Below are positions 2,806 to 47,392 of a stretch of 64,000 bases of DNA, in pieces; within the stretch, counting starts at the first letter, position 1; each line of letters begins with the position of its first letter. Made by a program: the position numbers and the translations under genes. The notes below the pieces were generated by a model. That model made no database searches, was not told the DNA's origin, and saw only the letters and a list, made by a program, of their open reading frames with translations. This stretch comes from Podarcis vaucheri (taxonomy: Eukaryota): the NCBI GenBank assembly GCA_965113315.1, contig OZ220363.1; one strand, written 5' to 3'.

Positions 2806-5800
2806 ATTATTATTATTATTATTAAAATGCACCAAGATTTAGTAGAGATTGTATCCCCTAGGCTGCAATCCTATTTATGTCTTTACTAACTCAAAAAGGG
2901 AGAGAAATAGCAAAGTTGGATAATATGGAGATGGGCAAAGTTTACTTTAATCATGCACGTCTAAAGGAAACCACTGGGACTAGCAGAGCGATGAGCCAAA
3001 GGAAATGAATGGGCTACTTGGTGGATAAAATTCAGATTGGAAATGCAAATGAATGCACGAGAGAGAGAGAGAGAGAGAGAGAGTGCAACTCCTACATTGG
3101 TTTAATTAGTTTTAAATTGGTTATATCCATGCAGGAGCAAATCTTGGGCACCTCATGGGCAGCCCCAGGAGCTCCTGCAGCTGTGACCCACATCCGGAGT
3201 TAAGTGATTTAAATGAGAAACTGGTAGAGAAAAGCAAAATAAATTGCCACTTTGGCATTATAATTCATTGGGGTTACACAGTTTCAAAGCACTAAACAAA
3301 GGAGCATATTGGAGTATCCTTAACCGATAAGTTTTACCCATCACAGCTGGGCGTGGGGAGACCAGATTGCTCCCTAAGGAAGCAAAAAATAGTCTTATCT
3401 GATATTTGGCAGCTTCCTAGGTTTTAAAATTCAGAACCCAATACCCAGTGCATGTTGTGGCGTTTGCACTGGACAGGCACCACTGTCAGAGGCTGATCAC
3501 TTCTTCTTATGCTGTGAAGGAAGGAGAAGCCAAGGCTAGACTTGGCCAAGTTGCCTCCTTCCTTTTCTCACTCCCAACAGGTGAGCAGAACCATCAGAGA
3601 AGACAGCCCTGATAAACTGGCATGTGAAGCGGGAAGGTGGGTGCTCTAGGAGTGTGTAGAAAGTGTCTAAGTTACTTAGAAGTCACACTGCTTGTCAGTG
3701 GTCTGGATCTGAGAGCATTTTCCCTGCTCAGAGCGAGTTGACTTTGGGTGCCCTGGACAAAGAATGGCGTGGTGATGACAGTGGAAACTAACATTTCTTG
3801 TGCACTTATCTGACTGATCACCTGTAAAAAGAGACAGCAGACACCAGGCTTATGAGATCTATTTTATTTTGTGTCAGAACCCCAAGATCCACGAATGTAG
3901 AGTCGGGTGCAACAGCCATATATGCTAAGAATTAAAGAATTCTGAGGGCAGGAATTTGCTTTGCTTTTTAAAAATTATTATTAAGTACCCAAGGCTTAAC
4001 AGAGCTCACAGTCCTTCCATACAAAATCCCACTGGGAGTCAGGAATCTTTCATGGTCTACTGTAAATCAGCAAGAGACCTACAGTAGGTCCCAATCTACT
4101 TTCTGCCTTCCTCAATGCTATTCGCTCATAGCTGTATATTTACAAATACACAGGTTACAAAGACACCAGTAAACCTCTGCCTAGCCCCTTTCACCTCCAA
4201 ATGAAATTGATTCTTCGAAGACTCGATCCGTTAAAGAGAGCACAAAGCATTTCCCCCTCATGGGTAAATTTTTTTAAGGTCAACTGGTACTTTGTTGGGG
4301 CCAACACTGAAAAACAAATAGCTGTCGGACCGTCAGGGATGAGCACTTAAAGGACTCAAAAAAATAATGAGTCTAACCATCTGGGCAGCTTCATTTAGAA
4401 AGAATTCAATGCCACAGATTAGTTTGTGTTGTAGAAGCAATAAAAAGTTCTTTTTAAAAAAGAGAGACCAATGTCTTGACATTCCAAAACAGACTGGGAG
4501 GCAAGGCAGTCCACTCTGCCAATAAGATGCTTATGCTAAAATAATTTCCACAAGGCTCTGGGTGGAACTGAGGCTGTGCAATAATGCAATAACATTGTTT
4601 CCCCTTGCTGCTTTTCAAGTCGCTTTTTCACATTGCTGTATTCATCGGAGAGTGGGTGGAAATGTCTTCACCCAATGCACATTACCCAATTTGCTTTCCC
4701 TCACCAAACTCCTGTTCAAGGAGGCTGTCGTCTGTGCATGCGTTGTCAACTGCACATGCACGACAGCTGTCTCAAATGTACACACCTAAGCTTCACGTTT
4801 TCAAATTGGATGGAAGCTGGTTTGAGGGAAAATGCATCAAACAGCAGTATTTCTTGAACTACAGGAGACAATATGGATTGTGGATAACTACATGCGTGCT
4901 CAGCTTCAAACACCAGTGGCAGGAGCACACTGAAGCCAGAATCAATGTCAATGAGTACACAGCCTAAATCCGAATGGAAGTTGTGCAGAGTAGAGCAGAG
5001 TTTAAGTACTTTAAATAAATAAATGTCTTGCTTAAAACTCTCCCTAGAAATTAAACATTATATGATTGAGATAGCATCATAAAACTAGATCCTACATTGT
5101 TTTAAACAGTTGCTGATTTATTTCTCAAGTGGTTGAGTGAAGACATATGGGTATGTTATATATTGTGATAAATAACACGGTTAAATTAATATCCAGCCAG
5201 CCAGCTAGCAAACAATAACATGGCCGAGCCACCTTGTGGAGCAAGGTTGAATTTGACATCACTCACACACTTCATCAGGAGAGGGGCAAAGAGCGGGGAG
5301 GTGGATGCGCCAATCTGAATTACATAACAAAAATGCTTCTCAACCCCAGAGCATTAGGAAGTCAAATTACCTCTCTGATGCCTTTCCTCATAGCTTCATC
5401 AAACACTGCAGGACTTGAATCTGCTAAAAGGCTTCTTCAAACACATTTATCTCTGCTAAAGTAAATGCGTGAAATAGCTCTCCTGTAGAAAAGGTCCTTT
5501 AAGTTCACCCATTGAAACCATCTGTTGTGTGAATCAAACGCAATAGCTTTATATGATTCCATTAAACACACAACATATATAGTTGGCAGAACGCCTTCTC
5601 ACCCCCTCATATTTTTTATTAAAGAGCCACAAGAGGTTATTTACTTTTATTGTTTTCTTAATTCCTATTTTCTTTCATCTTATTGGCAAGGAGCACCATG
5701 CACACTGATTTAAAAAATGCGTCCATAAAAATAACAAAACAATCGAGCCTAGACTGGTTCCCTCATTCATTTACATTTTTAATTTTTTTGATACGGTAGT

Positions 5801-37369: not shown

Positions 37370-39582
37370 TATTATTAATTAACAAGCCTTCTGCTCCTGT
37401 CCCTTTGCCAGTTCATAGAATACCCATTCTCAATAGTGGGCTGATTCTCATTAAAAAAATAAAACTGCCAGGTCAAACTCCAAAAGAAACTGGTTGCTGC
37501 CTGTCATATTGGGAGGCGCCCAGAGTGGCTGGGGAAACTCAGCCAGATGGGCAGGGTATAAATAATAAATTACCATCATCATCATCATCATCATCATTAT
37601 CATCATCATCATCATCATCATCATATGTCTAGGGGTGCTACATCCTTTTTCCTCACCTGAAGCAAAACAGGAACGTGCTGTTACAAGGCTGCATTGTGTT
37701 GTGTTTTGTCCCCCACTGAAAGGCTTACCTCAAGCTGTCCCGATAACTTCCCCTGACGAAAGACTGCGTTTTCTCAAGATTTGGTTCGGCTGCTGTAAAA
37801 CAAAGCCAAAGAAGCCCATCAGAAAGTGAGATCATCCATTCCATTCTTATATTTTGGTATGTGTTTACAGTGTATAAAGCAAACCCGTTACAAGGCTGAA
37901 AGTTTTTGCTTCATGGTGGTTTGCTAAATAGTCTACCTGAAGCACAGCAATTCTCTTTAGTTCAAAAAAGCGTGAGCTTAACTTAAAGTACACTTATTTG
38001 GCAGAGCAGCTTTTTAAGGGTCCTGGATGTGCTCCTTTAGCAGCCCATCAGTTGTCCACACATGGTCCTATGGCCCCATGTTGAGCTGTATGGCAATCAC
38101 TGGATCTGCAAAAGGAAGCTATGAAGAACAATGCTCTTTGCATGTACAAAGCACAGACCACTAGCACATGAAAGGTCTTGAGCAGCTGCCACACTAAGGA
38201 TAGAAGCGAGCAGACATAGGAGCCAACTCCTAGGGGTCAATGTCCCTTTGCCCCCCCAAACTATTTGAAGCCCCCCCACCCCAAGTTGAGACAGGCATTG
38301 CCAGTCAAATGGTGTGCATACATTGTGTCTTGCGATCTATTATGTGGGGTGGGGCTTACCTGCCCTCCCCCCAATATTTTATTCGAGTTGGCACACCTGC
38401 GAGCAGAAAAGCTACATGTTTTTGTTGGGGTGTACCACTTCAAGCGGGATGGGGGTGGTGCTGTGGGTTAAACCACAGAGCCTAGGGCTTGCCGATCAGA
38501 AGGTCGGTGGTTCGGATCCCTGCGACGGGGTGAGCTCCCGTTGCTTGGTCCCTGCTCCTGCCAACCTAGCAGTTCGAAAGCACGTCAAAGTGCAAGTAGA
38601 TAAATAGGTACCGCTCTGGCGGGAAGGTAAACAGTGTTTCCGTGCACTGCTCTGGTTCGCCAGAAGCGGCTTAGTCATGCTGGCCACATGACCAGCTGTA
38701 TGCCGGCTCCCTCAGCCAATAAAGCGAGATGAGCGGAACAACCCCAGAGTCGGTCACGACTGGACCTAATGGTACCTTTACCATTACCACTTCAAGCTAC
38801 AAGGGGTAGCTTGCATGTTCGAATATTCCCTCACCTCAAATTATCACTGCAAATACACAGCTAGAATGTCAAGATATGAAAGCTAAATTATAACCATTTT
38901 ATCCTGATGTACTGATTTTACAGATACAGATATGTTTCATTCCGAGCAGAATTCAAGCATGCAGTCTCCCCTCCTACACTCTGAAATGGTGAATCGCAGC
39001 ACTCTGTCCTTAGTTTATTCTCACAAATGCAGGGGACAATGGCTCAAGGCTGCTATAATTTTCTTCTTCACTGGTGATTAGGGAACACAGTGGGAATGGA
39101 AGCAGCCCTGAGACTTAACAATTTTAACAAGATGTTAAACTGTTTTTATATGCAACAACTGCGGCAAGAGTATTGTTAGCCCAGAAATGGAAACAAGAAG
39201 AAATTCCGATGAAAGAAGAATGGCAGACGAAATTAATGGACTATGCAGAATTGGACAAAATGACAGGAAGGATTCGAAACCTGCGGGACCAGAAATTTAC
39301 AGTAGATTGGAAGACGTATATGAATTATTTGAAGAGCAACTGTAATCAACAAATTATGCTAGTAGGACTACAAGAAGTTTTGTAAGGAGAAATATACGAA
39401 GTGTTACAAAGTAGAAAAAGATAAAGATATTGGTTATGAGTTTGAAATGCAATAGGGAAGATAAGAAATGCATACTAAGAGATTAGATTGGAAAATTTTC
39501 AGACAGGATTGATGGAAGTAAAAAAAATGAATAGGATGTAAAAGTATGTTTAATTACTGTTGAAAATGGTATGTTAAAAAAC

Positions 39583-39618
<36 letters not shown>

Positions 39619-42600
39619 GGTTTTGGTGTCTTCGGGTGTCTTCCCGTGTAAGAGTCAGGGTGTCTGTGCGACGTTTCGACGAGGTCTCACTCGTCATCTT
39701 CAGGCTGGTGCTTTCGGCTTCTTGTTACTGGAACAGAGCAGAGTCTGGTGTTTGAGTTCCTATAAATACTGTTGAGGGGTGTGGTGTATAGCCTCCAACG
39801 TTCTGGGCAGAGAGGAAGTTCCTAGATTAGTGTGCCTTTTCTTCTTTTGTTCCTTAATTACTTGAGGGATATCTTGGGTGATTTCATGAGTGATATTCTG
39901 AATATCACTGGGTGGGTCATTAAGTGTAGATTAGTTGCTAAAGCTTTCGTGTCTTGACCTCTTGGGCTTGTGAAGAGTTTTTCTGAGAAGATGGCTGCGC
40001 TGCATTTAGTTGTGCTCTGGCTTGGCTTCGTGTATAGGGGCGAGCTATGGTTTTGTGCCTTGTGCCAGCCAGATCTGTGTAGGGATTGCAGGGGGGTGCA
40101 GCATCCGGAGGTGCCACTATAGTTTGGCTACTGGATGGAGTCTGTAATATGTCTGTGGAGAGGGTCTGGGTTTGGGTCTGGTGTGGTTGATTGGTGACGG
40201 CGTTCTGTGTGCCTCTGGTTCTGGTGTCGGTTTTTGTGGGGAGGGCTAATTTCCAGATGTCTGGCAGGCGGGACGTGTCGTCACGCTTGTTCATGTTGTG
40301 AGGGTGTTTCTCTATCTCGATGGCTTCCATGATTATTCTCTTGTGGTGATGTTCCATGTTAAAGAGCAATTTGGAATCTGCAAAATTAATTTCGTGTCCT
40401 GTTTCTTTCATGTGTTGGAAAAGAGAGGAAGTTTTTTCTTCTTTTTTGACGGCATTCTTGTGTTCTGCGATACGTGCATTTATTCGTCTGTTTGTTTGTC
40501 CAATGTACGTGGCTGGGCAGACTTTGCAGGGTATTTCATAGACCCCTTGGTTTTCCAGCTGGATTTTGTCTTTTGGGTTTCTGAGGATATTGGCTATTTT
40601 TTGGTTGGTGCAGAAGGCTGTTTTGATATTGTGTTTATGGAGGATTTTGCTGATTTTGTCTGTAGTGCCCTTGATATAAGGAAGGAGGGCCATGCCATTG
40701 TTTTCTTCTGTGTCTTGGTTTTTGGGGGGTGTTTCTTTTTGGATTAGCTTCGTAACCCTGTTTTTCTGGTATCCATTGGCGATTAACACATTTGAGAGAT
40801 TCTGTAACTCAGTTGTCAAGTGGTCTTTGTCAGCCAGGCGTTTGGTTCTGGAGATGAGAGTCTTGGCTACGGAGTTTATTTGTGCAGGGTGGTGGTGTGA
40901 TTGTGCATGTAAGTAGCGGTTGGTGTGTGTGTTTTTCCGGTAGATAGTGTGTCCTAGGGAGCCATCAGGTTTTTTGTAGATTAGGACGTCAAGAAAGGGG
41001 AGTTGGTTGTTGTCTTCTATTTCCATAGTGAATTGTATTTTGGGGTGTAGGCTGTTGAGATGTGTGAGGAAGCTATCTAGTTTTTCTTTCCCGTGTGGCC
41101 AAATTACAAAGGTGTCGTCAACATATCTGAGCCAAAGTTTGGGTTTGTGTTCTGACTTGTCTAAAGCATTGGTTTCAAAGTGTTCCATGTACAAATTTGC
41201 GATGACCGGTGAGAGGGGTGATCCCATAGGTGCTCCTTCTATCTGTTTGTATCTTTGTCCATTGTGGATGAAGTACGTGTTGGTTAGGCAGTGGTTGGTC
41301 AGGTCCAGGATGTATTTGGGGGGGTTGTATTTGTTTTGAATGGCTGTCAAGGCTTCATTAATGGGCACTTGAGTGAAGAGAGATACAACATCGAAGCTCA
41401 CAAGTAGGTCATCGGGATGTAGGTATTGTTTCTTTATTGTTTCTATGAACTGGAAGGAGTTAGTAACGTGTGAAGCGATGGATTCTGCATAGGGCTGAAG
41501 TTGCTTAGCGAGAAATTTAGCGAGATTTTGTAGAGGTGAGCCTATGGAGCTGACTATTGGTCTGAGTGGTGTTCCTTCTTTGTGTATCTTGGGGAGACCG
41601 TAGAGTTTGGGGCATCTGGATGATTTTTCTCTGGGGATGATTCTTAGCTGGATTTCTTCACTGATAGGAGAGGCTTTTATTTTGGATTTGGTGGTTTTTT
41701 CCAGATAGGTGGTGGGATCTGTTTTTATAGGTTGGTAGGTAGGGTCTTGGAGTAGATTTGATAGTTTTGCTTGGTAGTCCGATGTGTTCATCACAACAGT
41801 GGCGTTGCCTTTGTCTGCTGGGAGAATGATTATGTTGTTGTCTTTCCTCAGGTTGGTGAGTGCTTTCTGTTCTTCTTTGTGTAAATTGCTTCTGGGTGGT
41901 TTGCTGGAGCAGAGGATGTTGGTGACTTCAAGTCTGATTTTATTGGCTTCATCTGGGTCGATTTTGGTCAGGCTAGCTTCGACTCCGCATATGATGTTTT
42001 CCGTGGGGATGCGTCTCGGGGCGACTGCAAAGTTGAAACCTTTGGAGAGTACTTTGGTTTCAGTTGGGGTGAGGATCCTGTTTGATATGTTATGTACTGT
42101 TTGTTTCATGGGTTGTTGTGGAGGGTGGCTGGGCTTCTGGCGTTTCTCTAGTTTGTAGAGTTTGTTGGTGTGTCTGTCTGTCTTATGTGAGGTCTCAGTT
42201 TCAGCTCTCCAGACGGCTAGTTGTTTGCATTTGTCCCAGAGTGCAGGGTGGATTTTGTTACATAGTTTGAGGTGAAGAGTGAGCAGATCTTTGTTGGTTT
42301 GGTTTAGTAGGTATCTTTTCTTATGTATTTCGTTTCTGATTAGGGATAGTTCAGTTCGTTTCAGGATCCTTTCGGTAGCTGGGGTTTTAGAGTGGAATTT
42401 AAGTTGGAAGCATGTGGGAGTTAAGTTGTTGTCTCGGCAGTTGCGTAGGAACAGGAGATCACATAAGATGGTGGCTCTTCGGATTTCTAGTTTCTCGTAG
42501 GTTCTTGTCAGCTGGAAGGTTTCCTCCCCGTAGAGGTGAGATATTTGCTTTCGTAGATTTTCACGGGTACAGGAATGCAGGTTTTGGTGTCTTCGGGTGT

Positions 42601-44447
42601 CTTCCCGTGTAAGAGTCAGGGTGTCTGTGCGACGTTTCGACGAGGTCTCACTCGTCATCTTCAGGCTGGTGCTTTCGGCTTCTTGTTACTGGAACAGAGC
42701 AGAGTCTGGTGTTTGAGTTCCTATAAATACTGTTGAGGGGTGTGGTGTATAGCCTCCAACGTTCTGGGCAGAGAGGAAGTTCCTAGATTAGTGTGCCTTT
42801 TCTTCTTTTGTTCCTTAATTACTTGAGGGATATCTTGGGTGATTTCATGAGTGATATTCTGAATATCACTGGGTGGGTCATTAAGTGTAGATTAGTTGCT
42901 AAAGCTTTCGTTGCTAAAGCTTTCGTGTCTTGACCTCTTGGGCTTGTGAAGAGTTTTTCTGAGAAGATGGCTGCGCTGCATTTAGTTGTGCTCTGGCTTG
43001 GCTTCGTGTATAGGGGCGAGCTATGGTTTTGTGCCTTGTGCCAGCCAGATCTGTGTAGGGATTGCAGGGGGGTGCAGCATCCGGAGGTGCCACTATAGTT
43101 TGGCTACTGGATGGAGTCTGTAATATGTCTGTGGAGAGGGTCTGGGTTTGGGTCTGGTGTGGTTGATTGGTGACGGCGTTCTGTGTGCCTCTGGTTCTGG
43201 TGTCGACTTGACAACTTGACAACTGAGTTACAGAATCTCTCAAATGTGTTAATCGCCAATGGATACCAGAAAAACAGGGTTACGAAGCTAATCCAAAAAG
43301 AAACACCCCCCAAAAACCAAGACACAGAAGAAAACAATGGCATGGCCCTCCTTCCTTATATCAAGGGCACTACAGACAAAATCAGCAAAATCCTCCATAA
43401 ACACAATATCAAAACAGCCTTCTGCACCAACCAAAAAATAGCCAATATCCTCAGAAACCCAAAAGACAAAATCCAGCTGGAAAACCAAGGGGTCTATGAA
43501 ATACCCTGCAAAGTCTGCCCAGCCACGTACATTGGACAAACAAACAGACGAATAAATGCACGTATCGCAGAACACAAGAATGCCGTCAAAAAAGAAGAAA
43601 AAACTTCCTCTCTTTTCCAACACATGAAAGAAACAGGACACGAAATTAATTTTGCAGATTCCAAATTGCTCTTTAACATGGAACATCACCACAAGAGAAT
43701 AATCATGGAAGCCATCGAGATAGAGAAACACCCTCACAACATGAACAAGCGTGACGACACGTCCCGCCTGCCAGACATCTGGAAATTAGCCCTCCCCACA
43801 AAAACCGACACCAGAACCAGAGGCACACAGAACGCCGTCACCAATCAACCACACCAGACCCAAACCCAGACCCTCTCCACAGACATATTACAGACTCCAT
43901 CCAGTAGCCAAACTATAGTGGCACCTCCGGATGCTGCACCCCCCTGCAATCCCTACACAGATCTGGCTGGCACAAGGCACAAAACCATAGCTCGCCCCTA
44001 TACACGAAGCCAAGCCAGAGCACAACTAAATGCAGCGCAGCCATCTTCTCAGAAAAACTCTTCACAAGCCCAAGAGGTCAAGACACGAAAGCTTTAGCAA
44101 CTAATCTACACTTAATGACCCACCCAGTGATATTCAGAATATCACTCATGAAATCACCCAAGATATCCCTCAAGTAATTAAGGAACAAAAGAAGAAAAGG
44201 CACACTAATCTAGGAACTTCCTCTCTGCCCAGAACGTTGGAGGCTATACACCACACCCCTCAACAGTATTTATAGGAACTCAAACACCAGACTCTGCTCT
44301 GTTCCAGTAACAAGAAGCCGAAAGCACCAGCCTGAAGATGACGAGTGAGACCTCGTCGAAACGTCGCACAGACACCCTGACTCTTACACGGGAAGACACC
44401 CGAAGACACCAAAACCTGCATTCCTGTACCCGTGAAAATCTACGAAA

Positions 44448-44495
<48 letters not shown>

Positions 44496-47392
44496 AAGCA
44501 GCCCTGAGACTATGTAGGCCCTGTGCCTTATATTTCCAAACAATGTATCCCAGAGTAGTAAGAAGATGCTTTCAGTTAGAAGAACGCCAAGATGTCTGAG
44601 GTTATATCAGCTCTGCATGCTCCAACAACTCTTTCGGAAATCTGAAGCGTTCTTAAAAACGGACTGCAGCACAGCAAGAAGGCTTGTTCAGTTTGTGTCA
44701 GCAAAGAATGCTGGTTGAGGGGTCATCAAAATGTGACACTAGTAAAGTGGTCTTGCTCCCAGGGACCATAGCTCAGTAGCAGAGCACAGGCTGTGAATGC
44801 ATAAGAATCCAGATTTGAACTCCAGCATCTCCAGTTAACAGGATCACAGGTAGCCATAATGGGAAAGCGTGTTCTCCTTCATGGAGAGCACGTGTTGCGG
44901 TGGGGGCCGCCAGTACACTCCAAAGTTGTGGGGTGGGCTAATTGATCGTTGGCCACTGTTGTGATTGGGCTTCCCTTCTTGTTGGGAAGAAGTTAATGTT
45001 GCCATTTGTTGATTGACAGCCAGAAATGCTAAAACTCCTTGCACGAAGCTAGGGCTTCCTCTTTTCACCTGTGCATCGGATTGCCCGTCCCCCCTCTCTA
45101 TATTTAGGGTTGTTCGCTCCCTATATTTAGGGTTGTTCGCTTTGACCTTGCTATGCCTGTCATGGGGTCGTCTGCTCTTGGGGCAGGGGCCCAGTAGGAA
45201 TTTTGTCCATCTGGCTGATTGGCTGGGGCCATTTGGTTTTTGCCTACTGCGTAGCAAATTGTCACAACTTGTAAGGTTGCGGTTAGGCATTGGTTTATGG
45301 TTTGGTTGGTGGAGGGGCATGGATTGGCTGTGCCTGCCCCTCTAATGCTGCTGCTGCAAGGGATTCCATTAAAGGAATCGGGGGCTAACTATTGCTTGTC
45401 CACCCTGTCAAGGTGGCTTGGGCCATGCAAGAGCTCCTGGTTGCATTTGGGGAGGGCTGAGGGCAGGTTCCCTGCTCCGTCGCTACCCCCAAGTGTATTC
45501 CCCTTTTCTGACTTTCGCAGGCGTGCGGAATGTCAGTCTGTTCCCCATGGGGGGTGCAGATAGTCACAACCAATGCCTAAGCAACCACTCACATTTTTGT
45601 ATTTTAATAAAGTTGTGGCCAAAATTATGCCAAAAAAACCTTAAACAAAAAATTCTGTGAGATGTGTGAGTTATTGGGGTGGTCCTGGGGACCTCGACAC
45701 ATAAAGAGAGAGAGGTGCATCAGTGACCCAGAGATAAATGCACAAATAATCTAACCCTGGAATAAGGCACAGCTTGTTTTGTACCTATGTGTAGGACTGA
45801 TTTTTCATGGGACCATAGGGAAATAGTTGTGTTAGTACAGAAAAGGAAATTAATTCCTTGAGTTAGTAAACCTTGACCTCGTTTTCAGAAACGCAGAATA
45901 AGGTACTTGCTTTGCACCGGCGTGTCAGTGAGTGCCTTGTCCCCTTGGCTTTGCAAAGTTACCAGTGTGAAATAAACCCCTTTCCGTTCCATCAGCTCCT
46001 CGTGTTTCCCCCTTTCCACTGCTCTTCCATGCTCAAAGCCAATTATGACATCAGCAGTTCTGATTGAGGACAAGCGGTGAGCAATGGAGATGGCCGTGCG
46101 CCCAACGCGAGCCTAAAGCAATAGGGGGGGGGGAAATATCGGTGAAGCAAACAGATGAGTAAAACAGGTAGGCTTTGGTCTCTTTGCTTTTTTGTGTGTG
46201 GTCGGTCACGGAGCATGGAATGAAGCCTAACTGGTTTAAGGACATGCAAAGAGCTCTATTGGATCAGACTAATGGCCCATCAAGGCCACTCACCATTGCA
46301 AACCAGGTGCCTATGAGATGCTTGCAAGAGGGGCATGAATGCTGGTACACAGAAATCTGTACATTCTGTGTGTGCCCGTCAAGCTGTCTTACACCAGCAC
46401 TGATATTTATATTCATTTCCAAGCAAATGTTTGAAGAGCAGCATTCCTACCTCCCATCTCCAGCATTGCCTGCTATTTACTGAACAATTCCCCCCGCTTT
46501 TTAAACTTTGTGCTTGTGCGCTTCCTGGCTGTGCAGTTCTGGTATTGGAACACTCATCTACTCCCATATAAATGAGTACGAAAGGTTGGAAGCTTAAAAG
46601 CTGTGGGTTTCATTTAACTAAGACATACTCAGAGCAGACCCACTGAGATCAAAGGACTTCAGTCAGTCGTGCCCATGGATTTCAATGGGTCCATTCAGTA
46701 CAGGAAACACTACCTCTTCCATCTCATTCCCCAACATGACTCTTCCCAACAGCTCTTTGAGATCTGTGTTGTGAAAGTCTTTGGGGGTAAACTCTTCCCC
46801 ACCACAGGTTGAGCTTCTGATCTGCCACTGCTCCCTTCCCACGTTTCCACTGTTAACAAGCCTAACAATTCTGGAAACTGCATGCATGTTTGTTGGTTAA
46901 TGGGAGGGTGTGAGGTTCTACGCTGTAGAACCTCGCATCCACTCTACTGATTTTCTTATGGAAACATGCAGCAAGTTCCAGAGCGCACATAGCGGGGGCC
47001 CGGCCTTGCTCCTAAAGGCATTTCAAGAACACCAATTTTGCATTGGAGCAAATGCAAAGCTCTGAATAGCACTGTCGTTGTTGTTGTTGCTAACTGGATT
47101 TTAGCCTGCCCTTCCTCTTTCTCTTCCCCACTCTGATCTCATCCTCACAAGAGAGATTGTGACTGCCTGAATGTGGGGGTTGAATATCGGATTCCCACTC
47201 CTACTCTGGCACTATAATCATTATATCACATTAGGTCTCCTAACCACACCTCACCATAATTTTGTATCTTGTAAACTTATTATAAAAAGAAAGTTGTGGA
47301 GGGGAGAAGAGACTAATCTCTACCATTAAGGAGATTATACTTAAGAGGGTGTGTGTGTTTTTAAAAGTTTCCTACCCCCACCCCCATGATAT

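What the first reader, a model, noticed from the sequence alone, without database searches (positions are those of the whole stretch)
39668..44367. Three hammerhead-like ribozyme motifs in an intact Penelope-like element, with the ORF start codon inside the catalytic core
Seen: each pseudo-LTR carries CUGAAGA-U, a perfect 6-bp stem II (GACGAG/CUCGUC), then GAAAC-GUC, where stem III is reduced to the palindrome ACGU. Copies are at 39668-39705 (-), 42629-42666 (-) and 44330-44367 (+). The AUG of the 906-aa ORF (42658) starts at the last A of the core, so cleavage after GUC (42631) would remove it; the next in-frame AUG is codon 184 (42109). Known: PLE pseudo-LTRs carry minimal type I hammerheads thought to act as dimers. 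Inference: the two same-strand copies could pair through ACGU and excise a 2961-nt monomer. That monomer regains its AUG and full ORF only if it circularises, which would couple RNA processing to translation of the RT-endonuclease. Caveat: stem I has only 2 contiguous bp (possibly extended by UCUGU/ACAGA), and the extra U is atypical.
Basis: partly seen in the sequence, partly recalled or inferred. Interest (0 to 1): 0.9.

Follow-up and report, generated by a model that had tools for sequence, protein, structure and literature searches.

The report
Penelope-like element with start-codon hammerheads
This is a very young, intact Poseidon-type Penelope-like retrotransposon in a lizard-like genome. 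Its small hammerhead ribozyme motifs contain the gene's start codon, an arrangement already published for the green anole element PAc, so the sequence is real but ordinary for its family, and the proposed RNA-circle mechanism remains untested.

Summary
Three identical 34-nt minimal type I hammerhead motifs lie at 39670-39703(-), 42631-42664(-) and 44332-44365(+). They sit in the repeats of an intact 906-aa RT + GIY-YIG Penelope-like element. Its only usable AUG (42658) is A9-bulged U-G10.1 of the ribozyme core.

None of this is new in kind. Minimal hammerheads in PLE pseudo-LTRs, dimer action, the unpaired base after A9 and a circular-RNA template were all proposed in 2014 (PMC4209133). The ORF starting at stem II with the cut about 26 nt downstream was shown for Anolis PAc in 2024 (PMC11167929).

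This element is 45% identical to PAc and 96% to a Podarcis protein. It shares PAc's (TA)n target and its internal reverse-transcription start sites (+84 and +113). I also found the same AUG-in-core layout in a termite-associated PLE family. Other PLE clades place the AUG just downstream of the cut.

RNA-seq reads showed no molecule ends at the cut site. The idea that translation needs circularisation is not supported and not excluded. A TATA-like box 64-71 nt upstream makes ordinary translation of the uncleaved transcript the simpler reading.

The scan also noted a PLE-derived hammerhead elsewhere in this genome (s1-851097).

The parts
39614..42574 (-). Full-length unit of the Penelope-like element (2961 nt). 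It runs from ORF position +85 to position +84 of the next unit.
   Evidence: Direct repeat D1 spacing 2961, 100% identity; boundary alignment
39938..42658 (-). Single ORF of 906 aa: N-terminal conserved domain (LYGEE..FLxxCRD, SKGFNF, DKG), RT, GIY-YIG endonuclease. The first 28 nt lie upstream of the ribozyme cut site, and the first 84 nt lie in the upstream partial copy.
   Evidence: 96% to Podarcis muralis protein, 45% to Anolis PAc
42631..42664 (-). Minimal type I hammerhead motif 1: CUGAAGA, bulged U, stem II GACGAG/CUCGUC with loop UGAGAC, then GAAAC-GUC. It contains the ORF's AUG (42658-42656). The predicted cut is after C 42631.
   Evidence: stem II is present in both the MFE and centroid folds of the identical copy
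39670..39703 (-). Hammerhead motif 2, identical to motif 1, in the downstream pseudo-LTR, 235 nt after the stop codon. The predicted cut is after C 39670.
44332..44365 (+). Hammerhead motif 3, identical to motif 1, inside the inverted 5'-truncated copy.
42575..43205 (-). Upstream partial tandem copy (pseudo-LTR): the last 616 nt of a unit plus a 15-nt tandem duplication at 42897-42926.
   Evidence: D1 and D2 spacings 2961 vs 2976; sequence
43210..44450 (+). Inverted 5'-truncated copy: the last 1212 nt of a unit plus a 29-30-nt 'tail' that reaches ORF position +113.
   Evidence: I1 and I2; end refined by alignment
42546..42574 (-). 'Tail' segment between the two 3'-end positions used in this insertion (+84 and +113). 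It corresponds to the PAc tail at about nt 85-119.
   Evidence: PMC11167929; reads from other copies break into (TA)n at 42575, 42546 and 42541
42722..42729 (-). TATA-like box TATTTATA, 64-71 nt upstream of the AUG, with no ATG in between. Candidate internal pLTR promoter (inferred).
   Evidence: read directly
39582..39613 (.). (TA)n target microsatellite flanking the direct arm.
44451..44510 (.). (TA)n target microsatellite flanking the inverted arm.

Best explanation
This is one recent insertion of an intact Poseidon-type Penelope-like element. It went into a (TA)n repeat inside an intron of an ABCB-type transporter gene. It has the standard PLE insertion anatomy: an inverted 5'-truncated copy, a partial tandem copy (pseudo-LTR) and a full unit.

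Each copy of the pLTR-ORF junction carries the family's minimal type I hammerhead. The AUG formed by A9, the bulged U and G10.1 is the element's genuine start codon. It comes almost for free: G10.1 is near-invariant and A6 supplies a purine at -3, so a U at the bulge creates it. The same layout is shared with Anolis PAc and with an insect-associated PLE family.

Likely working (inferred, following the PAc experiments):
- A promoter in the pLTR makes a capped transcript whose first AUG is the core AUG. The uncleaved RNA is the mRNA.
- The protein binds the first ~170 nt of its own ORF RNA. It starts reverse transcription internally, here at +84 and +113, on nicked AT-rich DNA on both strands. 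This gives the twin-armed insertion.
- Ribozyme cleavage is slow and protein-assisted (possibly dimeric through ACGU). It removes the cap and AUG, so cleavage and translation of one molecule exclude each other.
- The RT start sites lie 3' of the cut. A productive template must therefore keep an intact, or religated, hammerhead.

Shown here: the anatomy, the homology, the only-AUG argument, conservation and covariation of stem II, and the end positions. Inferred: the promoter, the order of events and the role of cleavage. The confidence is about 0.9 for the identity and anatomy and about 0.5 for the inferred mechanism; 0.72 is the blend.
For: - Motif and ORF anatomy.
- The conserved N-terminal motifs (Y43, G44, F70, L71, C74, R75 invariant in 11 homologues) lie upstream of Met184. 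The start must therefore be before about aa 40, where only the core AUG exists.
- PAc has the same layout: ORF starts at stem II, cut 26 nt after the start codon, tail about 85-119, AT-rich targets, both strands extended, ribozyme needs protein, ribozyme mutants still insert, no reads end at the cut.
- The ends here are at +84 and +113 in (TA)n. Reads from other genomic copies break at the same places.
- No pile-up of read ends at the cut site.
- The same AUG-in-core layout holds at DNA level in termite-metagenome PLEs. In L058 the core AUG opens a 415-codon ORF with LYGEE 40 aa downstream.
- An N-terminal signature, M-x(6-8)-ETS or -KRR placed 40-46 aa before LYGE, is seen in 8 homologues including a beetle.
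- Stem II covaries: 19 of 25 distinct instances have at least 4 bp, against 4.3% of shuffled spacers. All four Watson-Crick pair types occur at positions 10.2-10.5, and G10.1-C11.1 is near-invariant.
- The motif is not a chance match: 0.055 descriptor hits expected per window.
Against: - No cleavage assay exists for this sequence.
- Stem I has only 2 contiguous bp.
- Rfam hammerhead models give no hit.
- The motif region has no thermodynamic signal (z = 0.51).
- The promoter and transcription start are inferred from a TATA-like box only.
- The RNA-seq depth was low (5-35x), and the reads came mostly from other copies 95-99% alike.
- Reads across a religated circle junction would look the same as uncleaved tandem RNA, so the read data cannot exclude circles.
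- A daughter copy like this one ends at +84. It lacks the +85 to +172 RNA that PAc needs 3' of a full unit. A purely linear life cycle therefore needs longer tandem masters.
Confidence: 0.72

Rival explanations
1. The two same-strand hammerheads pair through ACGU and excise a 2961-nt monomer. The monomer must be ligated into a circle to rejoin the AUG with the ORF, so the RT-endonuclease is translated from a circular RNA.
For: The geometry is exact. Two identical sense motifs lie 2961 nt apart, and the cut falls 28 nt into the ORF with no other AUG before codon 184. Hammerhead products (5'-OH and 2',3'-cyclic phosphate) are ligated into circles in retrozymes (PMC7229834). RNA-seq cannot tell a religated junction from tandem DNA-templated RNA.
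Against: - The uncleaved transcript already carries the AUG in a good context, with a TATA-like box 64-71 nt upstream and no earlier ATG.
- A circle would need cap-independent initiation, for which there is no evidence.
- The PAc ribozyme needs the element's own protein to cleave, so protein must exist before cleavage.
- No linear cleaved intermediates were seen in Anolis or here.
- Termite-family elements keep the AUG but have A or U at core position 3, where C3 mutation abolished PAc cleavage. They nevertheless proliferated.
Confidence: 0.06
2. A circular RNA serves as the reverse-transcription template only (Cervera and de la Pena 2014). Hammerhead cleavage plus host ligation makes a unit circle, and rolling reverse transcription from +84/+113 produces the more-than-unit insertions. 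Translation still comes from uncleaved linear RNA.
For: - The direct arm is 3592 nt of cDNA, which is more than one unit, and the second arm starts at the other RT site.
- A cleaved linear monomer would carry the RT start sites at its 5' end and could not template a unit (coordinates).
- A daughter copy ending at +84 can regain a complete junction only as a circle or from a longer tandem.
- The model was proposed in PMC4209133.
Against: - Tandem genomic masters are common for PAc and explain the same products.
- Ribozyme mutants insert normally in vitro.
- The upstream partial copy carries a 15-nt duplication that is absent from the other two passes. A single circle does not predict this, although RT or replication slippage could produce it.
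Confidence: 0.15
3. The conserved motif matters mainly as a structured RNA at the ORF start, for example as a protein-binding or translation-start element. Self-cleavage would be vestigial or dispensable.
For: - The termite-associated family conserves GAAGA-U-G, stem II, GAAACGUC and the AUG, but has A or U instead of C3.
- PAc insertion is indifferent to ribozyme mutations, and no cleaved RNA is seen in vivo.
- Naiad PLEs thrive without canonical hammerheads (PMC8557442).
Against: - The full catalytic core is intact here and in PAc.
- PAc cleavage follows the C3/G8 rescue logic.
- The invariance of GAAACGUC and the cleavage triplet is most simply explained by catalysis.
Confidence: 0.2
4. Chance resemblance to a hammerhead core.
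For: No Rfam hit and a weak stem I.
Against: 0.055 descriptor hits are expected per 128 kb searched, and the motif sits at the homologous position in PAc and other PLEs with a covarying stem II.
Confidence: 0.01

Closest known systems
PAc (Poseidon_Ac) of Anolis carolinensis, Frangieh et al. 2024, Mob DNA (PMC11167929)
   Same: - Single RT + GIY-YIG ORF with a similar N-terminal domain.
- Minimal hammerhead at the pLTR-ORF junction, with the AUG at A9-U-G10.1.
- Cut 25-26 nt after the start codon, and GAAACGUC identical.
- 3' ends at about +84 and about +113-118 ('tail'), AT-rich or (TA)n targets, and two-armed insertions.
   Different: - Only 45% protein identity.
- Stem II is entirely different (GACGAG/CUCGUC against GCCUGC/GUGGGC).
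- Loop II is 6 nt instead of 7, so GAAACGUC is read in another frame (SKRR against ETS).
- The unit is 2961 nt against 2667 nt.
- No biochemistry exists for this element.
PLE minimal hammerheads (min-HHR), Cervera and de la Pena 2014 (PMC4209133); dimer cleavage reported by Lunse et al. 2017 (cited in PMC7761336; the paper itself is not held)
   Same: Core boxes, G10.1-C11.1, an unpaired base after A9, a long helix II, a palindromic 15.2-16.2 with no loop 3, and location in pLTRs.
   Different: Helix I here has 2 contiguous bp, against the usual 4-5. This resembles the D. virilis variant.
Retrozymes (non-autonomous hammerhead retroelements that form circRNAs), PMC7229834 and PMC4918200
   Same: Tandem type I hammerheads that could excise a unit with ligatable ends. 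Dimeric action in vertebrates.
   Different: Retrozymes are 170-800 nt and non-coding, and their circles have been demonstrated. Here the unit is 2961 nt and coding, and no circle has been shown.
HDV-like ribozymes at the 5' end of R2 and other non-LTR elements (Ruminski et al. 2011, cited in PMC13725137), and hammerheads in 5' UTRs of RNA viruses (PMC13725137)
   Same: A self-cleaving ribozyme abuts the start of a retroelement or viral ORF and is linked to translation.
   Different: In those systems the cut lies upstream of the start codon, as it does in the non-Poseidon PLE loci L028 and L038. Here the start codon lies upstream of the cut.

Membership tests
PLE minimal type I hammerhead (min-HHR) | Core boxes CUGANGA ... 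GAAA ... UH in type I order | tested here: met
   CUGAAGA / GAAA / GUC in all three copies
PLE minimal type I hammerhead (min-HHR) | G10.1-C11.1 pair closing a long helix II (6-8 bp) | tested here: met
   GACGAG/CUCGUC, 6 Watson-Crick bp, present in both MFE and centroid folds
PLE minimal type I hammerhead (min-HHR) | One unpaired nucleotide between A9 and G10.1 | tested here: met
   U at 42657. Among the related instances, 22 of 25 have a bulge of U, A or C.
PLE minimal type I hammerhead (min-HHR) | Helix III reduced to the palindromic 15.1-16.1 (ACGU), with no loop 3 | tested here: met
   GAAACGUC. The same octamer occurs in PAc and most fetched PLE loci.
PLE minimal type I hammerhead (min-HHR) | Helix I of about 4-5 bp | tested here: not met
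   Only GC/GC is contiguous, with a possible distant UCUGU/ACAGA. A 2-bp helix I is described for the D. virilis variant.
PLE minimal type I hammerhead (min-HHR) | Compensatory variation of helix II across related elements | tested here: met
   All four Watson-Crick pair types at 10.2-10.5. 19 of 25 instances have at least 4 bp, against 4.3% of shuffled spacers.
PLE minimal type I hammerhead (min-HHR) | Site-specific self-cleavage (as a dimer or with protein) | not testable with these tools
   RNA-seq gave no ends at the cut site, but depth was low and cleaved RNA may be rare or religated.
Rfam hammerhead families (canonical type I / II / III, HH9, HH10) | Score at or above the gathering threshold of a hammerhead covariance model | tested here: not met
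   No hammerhead hit at gathering threshold or at E<=10. This is expected for motifs without helix III.
Penelope/Poseidon-clade PLE | Single ORF with N-terminal DKG-containing domain, RT and C-terminal GIY-YIG | tested here: met
   Pfam RVT_1 6.7e-15. GIY-YIG E = 0.0011 at 19.7 bits, below Pfam's 22.6-bit cutoff. Alignment invariants include D282, K283, G284 and Y512, V513, D514, D515. Best hits are Podarcis, Vipera and Anolis PLE proteins.
Penelope/Poseidon-clade PLE | Partial tandem (pLTR), adjacent inverted 5'-truncated copy, 30-40-bp tail, microsatellite target | tested here: met
   described in PMC8557442
PAc-type layout (start codon inside the hammerhead) | AUG at A9-bulge-G10.1, in frame with the RT ORF, with the cut about 25-26 nt after the start codon | tested here: met
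   PAc description and sequence
Hammerhead-derived circular RNA element (retrozyme-like) | Covalently closed unit-length RNA | not testable with these tools
   The genomic tandem junction is identical to a circle junction, so reads cannot discriminate.

The most novel reading that the evidence does not exclude
The hammerhead-excised, religated 2961-nt circle is the element's self-sufficient master RNA. Only the circle rejoins the AUG to the ORF and also places the internal RT start sites (+84/+113) and their binding region 3' of a full unit. A daughter copy that ends at +84, like this one, cannot do that as a linear transcript. Rolling reverse transcription of the circle would then create the pseudo-LTRs.
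Probability: 0.1. Interest if true: 0.75.

Novelty: new member of a known kind. Interest (0 to 1): 0.28.

Why it matters
The in vivo role of hammerheads in Penelope-like elements is still called a mystery in reviews (PMC7761336).

This locus is a clean natural example. It has one intact unit bracketed by two identical sense ribozymes, with the start codon upstream of the cut and the RT start sites downstream of it. The geometry means that cleavage excludes both translation and templating of the same linear molecule.

Comparison shows that the AUG-in-core layout is shared by lizard, beetle and termite-associated elements. Other PLE clades put the AUG after the cut.

These points sharpen what an experiment must explain. 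The locus itself adds a family member, not a new principle.

Tried and rejected
- Rfam at gathering and at E<=10: only AT-repeat noise, no hammerhead.
- Thermodynamic folding of the motif region and of +29..+175: no signal above shuffles. Only stem II is stable.
I could not fetch the DNA of the closest homologues (Podarcis, Vipera, P0003, P0006, P0027). For these, conservation of the layout rests on N-terminal peptide signatures only.
- MAFFT alignment A2 of the motifs is not structure-aware: a gap shifts the helix II columns. I therefore did not run the count of structure pairs on it and counted pairs per sequence in a script instead.
- RNA reads: no joints, and no start or end pile-ups. This cannot decide between uncleaved and religated RNA. 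The strand signal was mixed.
- The 15-nt duplication in the upstream copy was considered as a discriminator between a circle and a tandem template. It was rejected as indecisive, because slippage explains it under either model.
- Lunse et al. 2017 is not held in the library.
- A search for papers linking PLE, circular RNA and start codon found none that proposes circularisation-dependent translation.
Full report
**1. What is in the sequence**

Reading 39400-44700 on the minus strand and searching the exact 34-mer shows three identical copies of CTGAAGATGACGAGTGAGACCTCGTCGAAACGTC. They lie at 39670-39703(-), 42631-42664(-) and 44332-44365(+), and none is expected in shuffles.

The motif parses as a type I hammerhead without helix III:
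- C3-U4-G5-A6-A7-G8-A9
- one unpaired U
- helix II GACGAG/CUCGUC (6 Watson-Crick bp, loop UGAGAC)
- G12-A13-A14
- A15.1-C-G-U16.1
- C17

A descriptor scan of the whole window on both strands finds only these three sites. Dinucleotide shuffles give 0.055 hits per window. Helix I has only GC/GC contiguous. Rfam hammerhead models do not report the motif even at E<=10. Folding shows only helix II as stable.

The ORF 39938..42658(-) encodes 906 aa with RVT_1 and GIY-YIG. Its ATG starts at 42658, which is A9. The next in-frame Met is codon 184, and an in-frame TAA lies ten codons upstream. The three copies are 100% identical parts of one insertion, so they count as one independent case.

**2. Anatomy of the insertion**

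Repeat analysis and a boundary alignment give the following parts:
- a full 2961-nt unit at 39614-42574(-)
- an upstream partial tandem copy at 42575-43205(-), which carries a 15-nt tandem duplication at 42897-42926
- an inverted 5'-truncated copy at 43210-44450(+)

The whole structure is flanked by (TA)n on both sides. The direct arm ends at ORF position +83/+84 (...CCTGCA). The inverted arm ends at +113 (...CGAAAGCA), which is 29-30 nt further.

This is the textbook PLE insertion structure: pLTR, adjacent inverted truncated copy, a 30-40-bp tail and a microsatellite target (PMC8557442).

The window also carries ABC-transporter nucleotide-binding exons on the minus strand on both sides of the element. 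The element is therefore intronic and in sense orientation.

**3. Relatives**

The ORF is 96% identical to a Podarcis muralis protein, 82% to a Vipera latastei protein and 45% to the Anolis carolinensis PAc protein.

In an alignment of 11 full-length homologues, the N-terminal motifs LYGEE and FLxxCRD (aa 42-76) are invariant or nearly so. Translation must therefore start before about aa 40. The core AUG is the only AUG available there.

**4. What is already known**

Cervera and de la Pena 2014 (PMC4209133) described minimal hammerheads in the pLTRs of Poseidon, Neptune, Xena and other PLEs. Their description includes:
- a long helix II
- a short helix I
- a palindromic 15.2-16.2
- probable dimeric action with low activity in vitro

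They also proposed that cleaved RNAs are ligated into circles that template more-than-unit insertions.

Frangieh et al. 2024 (PMC11167929) worked with PAc. [quoted passage not shown] They also found the following:
- Cleavage occurs only when the element's protein is added, and it follows the C3G/G8C rescue pattern.
- Ribozyme mutants insert normally in vitro.
- Reverse transcription starts internally at two sites that bound the tail (about nt 85-119).
- Both DNA strands are cut and extended.
- No RNA-seq reads start or end at the cut site.

The element here reproduces this layout point for point: cut after +28, ends at +84 and +113, a (TA)n target and two arms.

I therefore fetched 80 PLE loci from metagenome contigs using a protein alignment.

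A termite-metagenome family, 41-50% identical to the query, carries GCC-UAUGAAGA-U-GGAAC-(9 nt)-GUUCC-GAAAC-GUC-GGC. Its AUG sits at A9-U-G10.1. In L058 that AUG opens a 415-codon ORF (MDQIEGSETS...) that reaches LYGEE 40 aa later. In that family core position 3 is A, or U in two loci, rather than C.

Eight database homologues, including a beetle protein, show the peptide signature of a translated hammerhead. The signature is M-x(6-8)-ETS or -KRR placed 40-46 aa before LYGE. The two variants reflect the two reading frames of GAAACGUC. The element here reads S-K-R-R and PAc reads E-T-S, because loop II differs by one nucleotide.

In other PLE loci (L028, L038, L029, L004, L046, L052) the bulged base is A or C and there is no core AUG. 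Where the ORF start is visible (L028, L038), the first AUG lies about 25-45 nt downstream of the cut.

I ran a test that did not presuppose pairing. It took any NTGANGA, then 12-30 nt, then GAAACGTY. Of 25 distinct instances, 19 have at least 4 contiguous helix II pairs, against 4.3% of shuffled spacers. All four Watson-Crick pair types occur at 10.2-10.5, and G10.1-C11.1 is almost invariant.

**6. RNA evidence**

Two bulk RNA-seq runs with the same species label were laid on one unit, together with two contig sets.
- Depth was 5-35x in both orientations.
- Most reads were 95-99% alike and carried fixed differences, so they come from sister copies.
- No position showed a pile-up of molecule starts or ends, including 42630/42631.
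- No joints were reported.
- Loose ends running into TA repeats cluster at 42575, 42546 and 42541. Many copies therefore share the +84 and +113-118 ends.

This agrees with the Anolis result. It does not exclude circles, because a religated junction is identical to the tandem DNA-templated sequence.

**7. How it most likely works**

Shown here: the AUG in the core is the real and only start. Cleavage would leave it on a short 5' fragment (28 ORF nt plus the leader). The RT start sites lie 56 and 85 nt 3' of the cut.

Read from the sequence: a TATA-like TATTTATA lies 64-71 nt upstream of the AUG with no ATG in between. A6 gives a purine at -3.

Inferred:
- A pLTR promoter produces a capped RNA whose first AUG is the core AUG, and the uncleaved RNA is the mRNA.
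- The protein binds the 5' part of its ORF RNA and primes internally on nicked (TA)n DNA on both strands.
- Cleavage, when it happens, is protein-assisted. It removes the cap and AUG, so one molecule cannot be both cleaved and translated.
- A cleaved linear monomer would carry the RT start sites at its 5' end. It could not template a unit.
- In this insertion all three hammerheads lie upstream of the cDNA start points. The templates were therefore uncut there, or religated.

**8.

It is geometrically coherent, and it solves a real puzzle. A daughter copy that ends at +84 lacks the +85 to +172 RNA that PAc needs 3' of a full unit.

Several points weigh against it:
- The template part of the model repeats the 2014 proposal.
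- The translation part needs cap-independent initiation on a circle.
- The ribozyme needs the protein before it can cleave.
- Uncleaved RNA can already be translated.
- The termite family keeps the AUG with a non-canonical position 3.

I put translation-requires-circle at about 6%, and a functional circular template at about 15%.

**9. Verdict**

The feature is real and correctly described. It is a new family member, a lacertid-type Poseidon element, of an architecture that is already published. The mechanistic extension is an untested hypothesis.

Noticed in passing
window 42897-42926 (-): A 15-nt tandem duplication (ACGAAAGCTTTAGCA x2), spanning the stop-codon region, is present only in the upstream partial copy. 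The full unit and the inverted copy lack it, and otherwise all copies are 100% identical.
   Followed up: partly
window ~50575, ~22864, ~20094 (-): ABC-transporter nucleotide-binding exons (Walker A twice, Walker B/signature) lie on the minus strand on both sides of the element. The PLE therefore sits in an intron in sense orientation, and the host pre-mRNA carries two sense hammerhead motifs. From memory the motifs look ABCB11-like; the gene identity was not tested.
   Followed up: partly
window 42722-42729 (-), also 39761-39768 (-): A TATA-like TATTTATA lies 64-71 nt upstream of the core AUG with no ATG in between. PAc has a TATATATTA-like stretch at a similar distance. It is a candidate internal pLTR promoter.
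   Followed up: no
L001, L008, L009, L042, L050, L058 (e.g. L058:1509-1568:+); L043, L045: The termite-metagenome PLE family keeps GAAGA-U-G, helix II, GAAACGUC and the in-frame AUG. It has A (or U in L043 and L045) instead of C at core position 3, which creates a second in-frame AUG two codons upstream. This suggests that cleavage may be dispensable or altered in that family.
   Followed up: partly
L028:255-290 and 3076-3111 (+); L038:2089-2126 (+): In more distant PLE loci the bulged base is A or C, and the first AUG of the RT ORF lies about 25-45 nt downstream of the predicted cut. Cleavage would leave the ORF intact with a short leader, the opposite of the Poseidon layout.
   Followed up: partly
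window 39614-40825 vs 43210-44421; 42907-43205 vs 43806-44104: Perfect inverted repeats of 1212 nt and 299 nt mean that any read-through transcript, including the host intron, can form a long double-stranded hairpin. That is a plausible small-RNA trigger.
   Followed up: no
window 40118-42174: RNA-seq reads and contigs differ from this copy at dozens of fixed positions. Loose ends at 42610 show a sister subfamily with ...CCGAAACGUCGCCCAGACACC. The transcribed or most abundant copies therefore belong to slightly different subfamilies.
   Followed up: no
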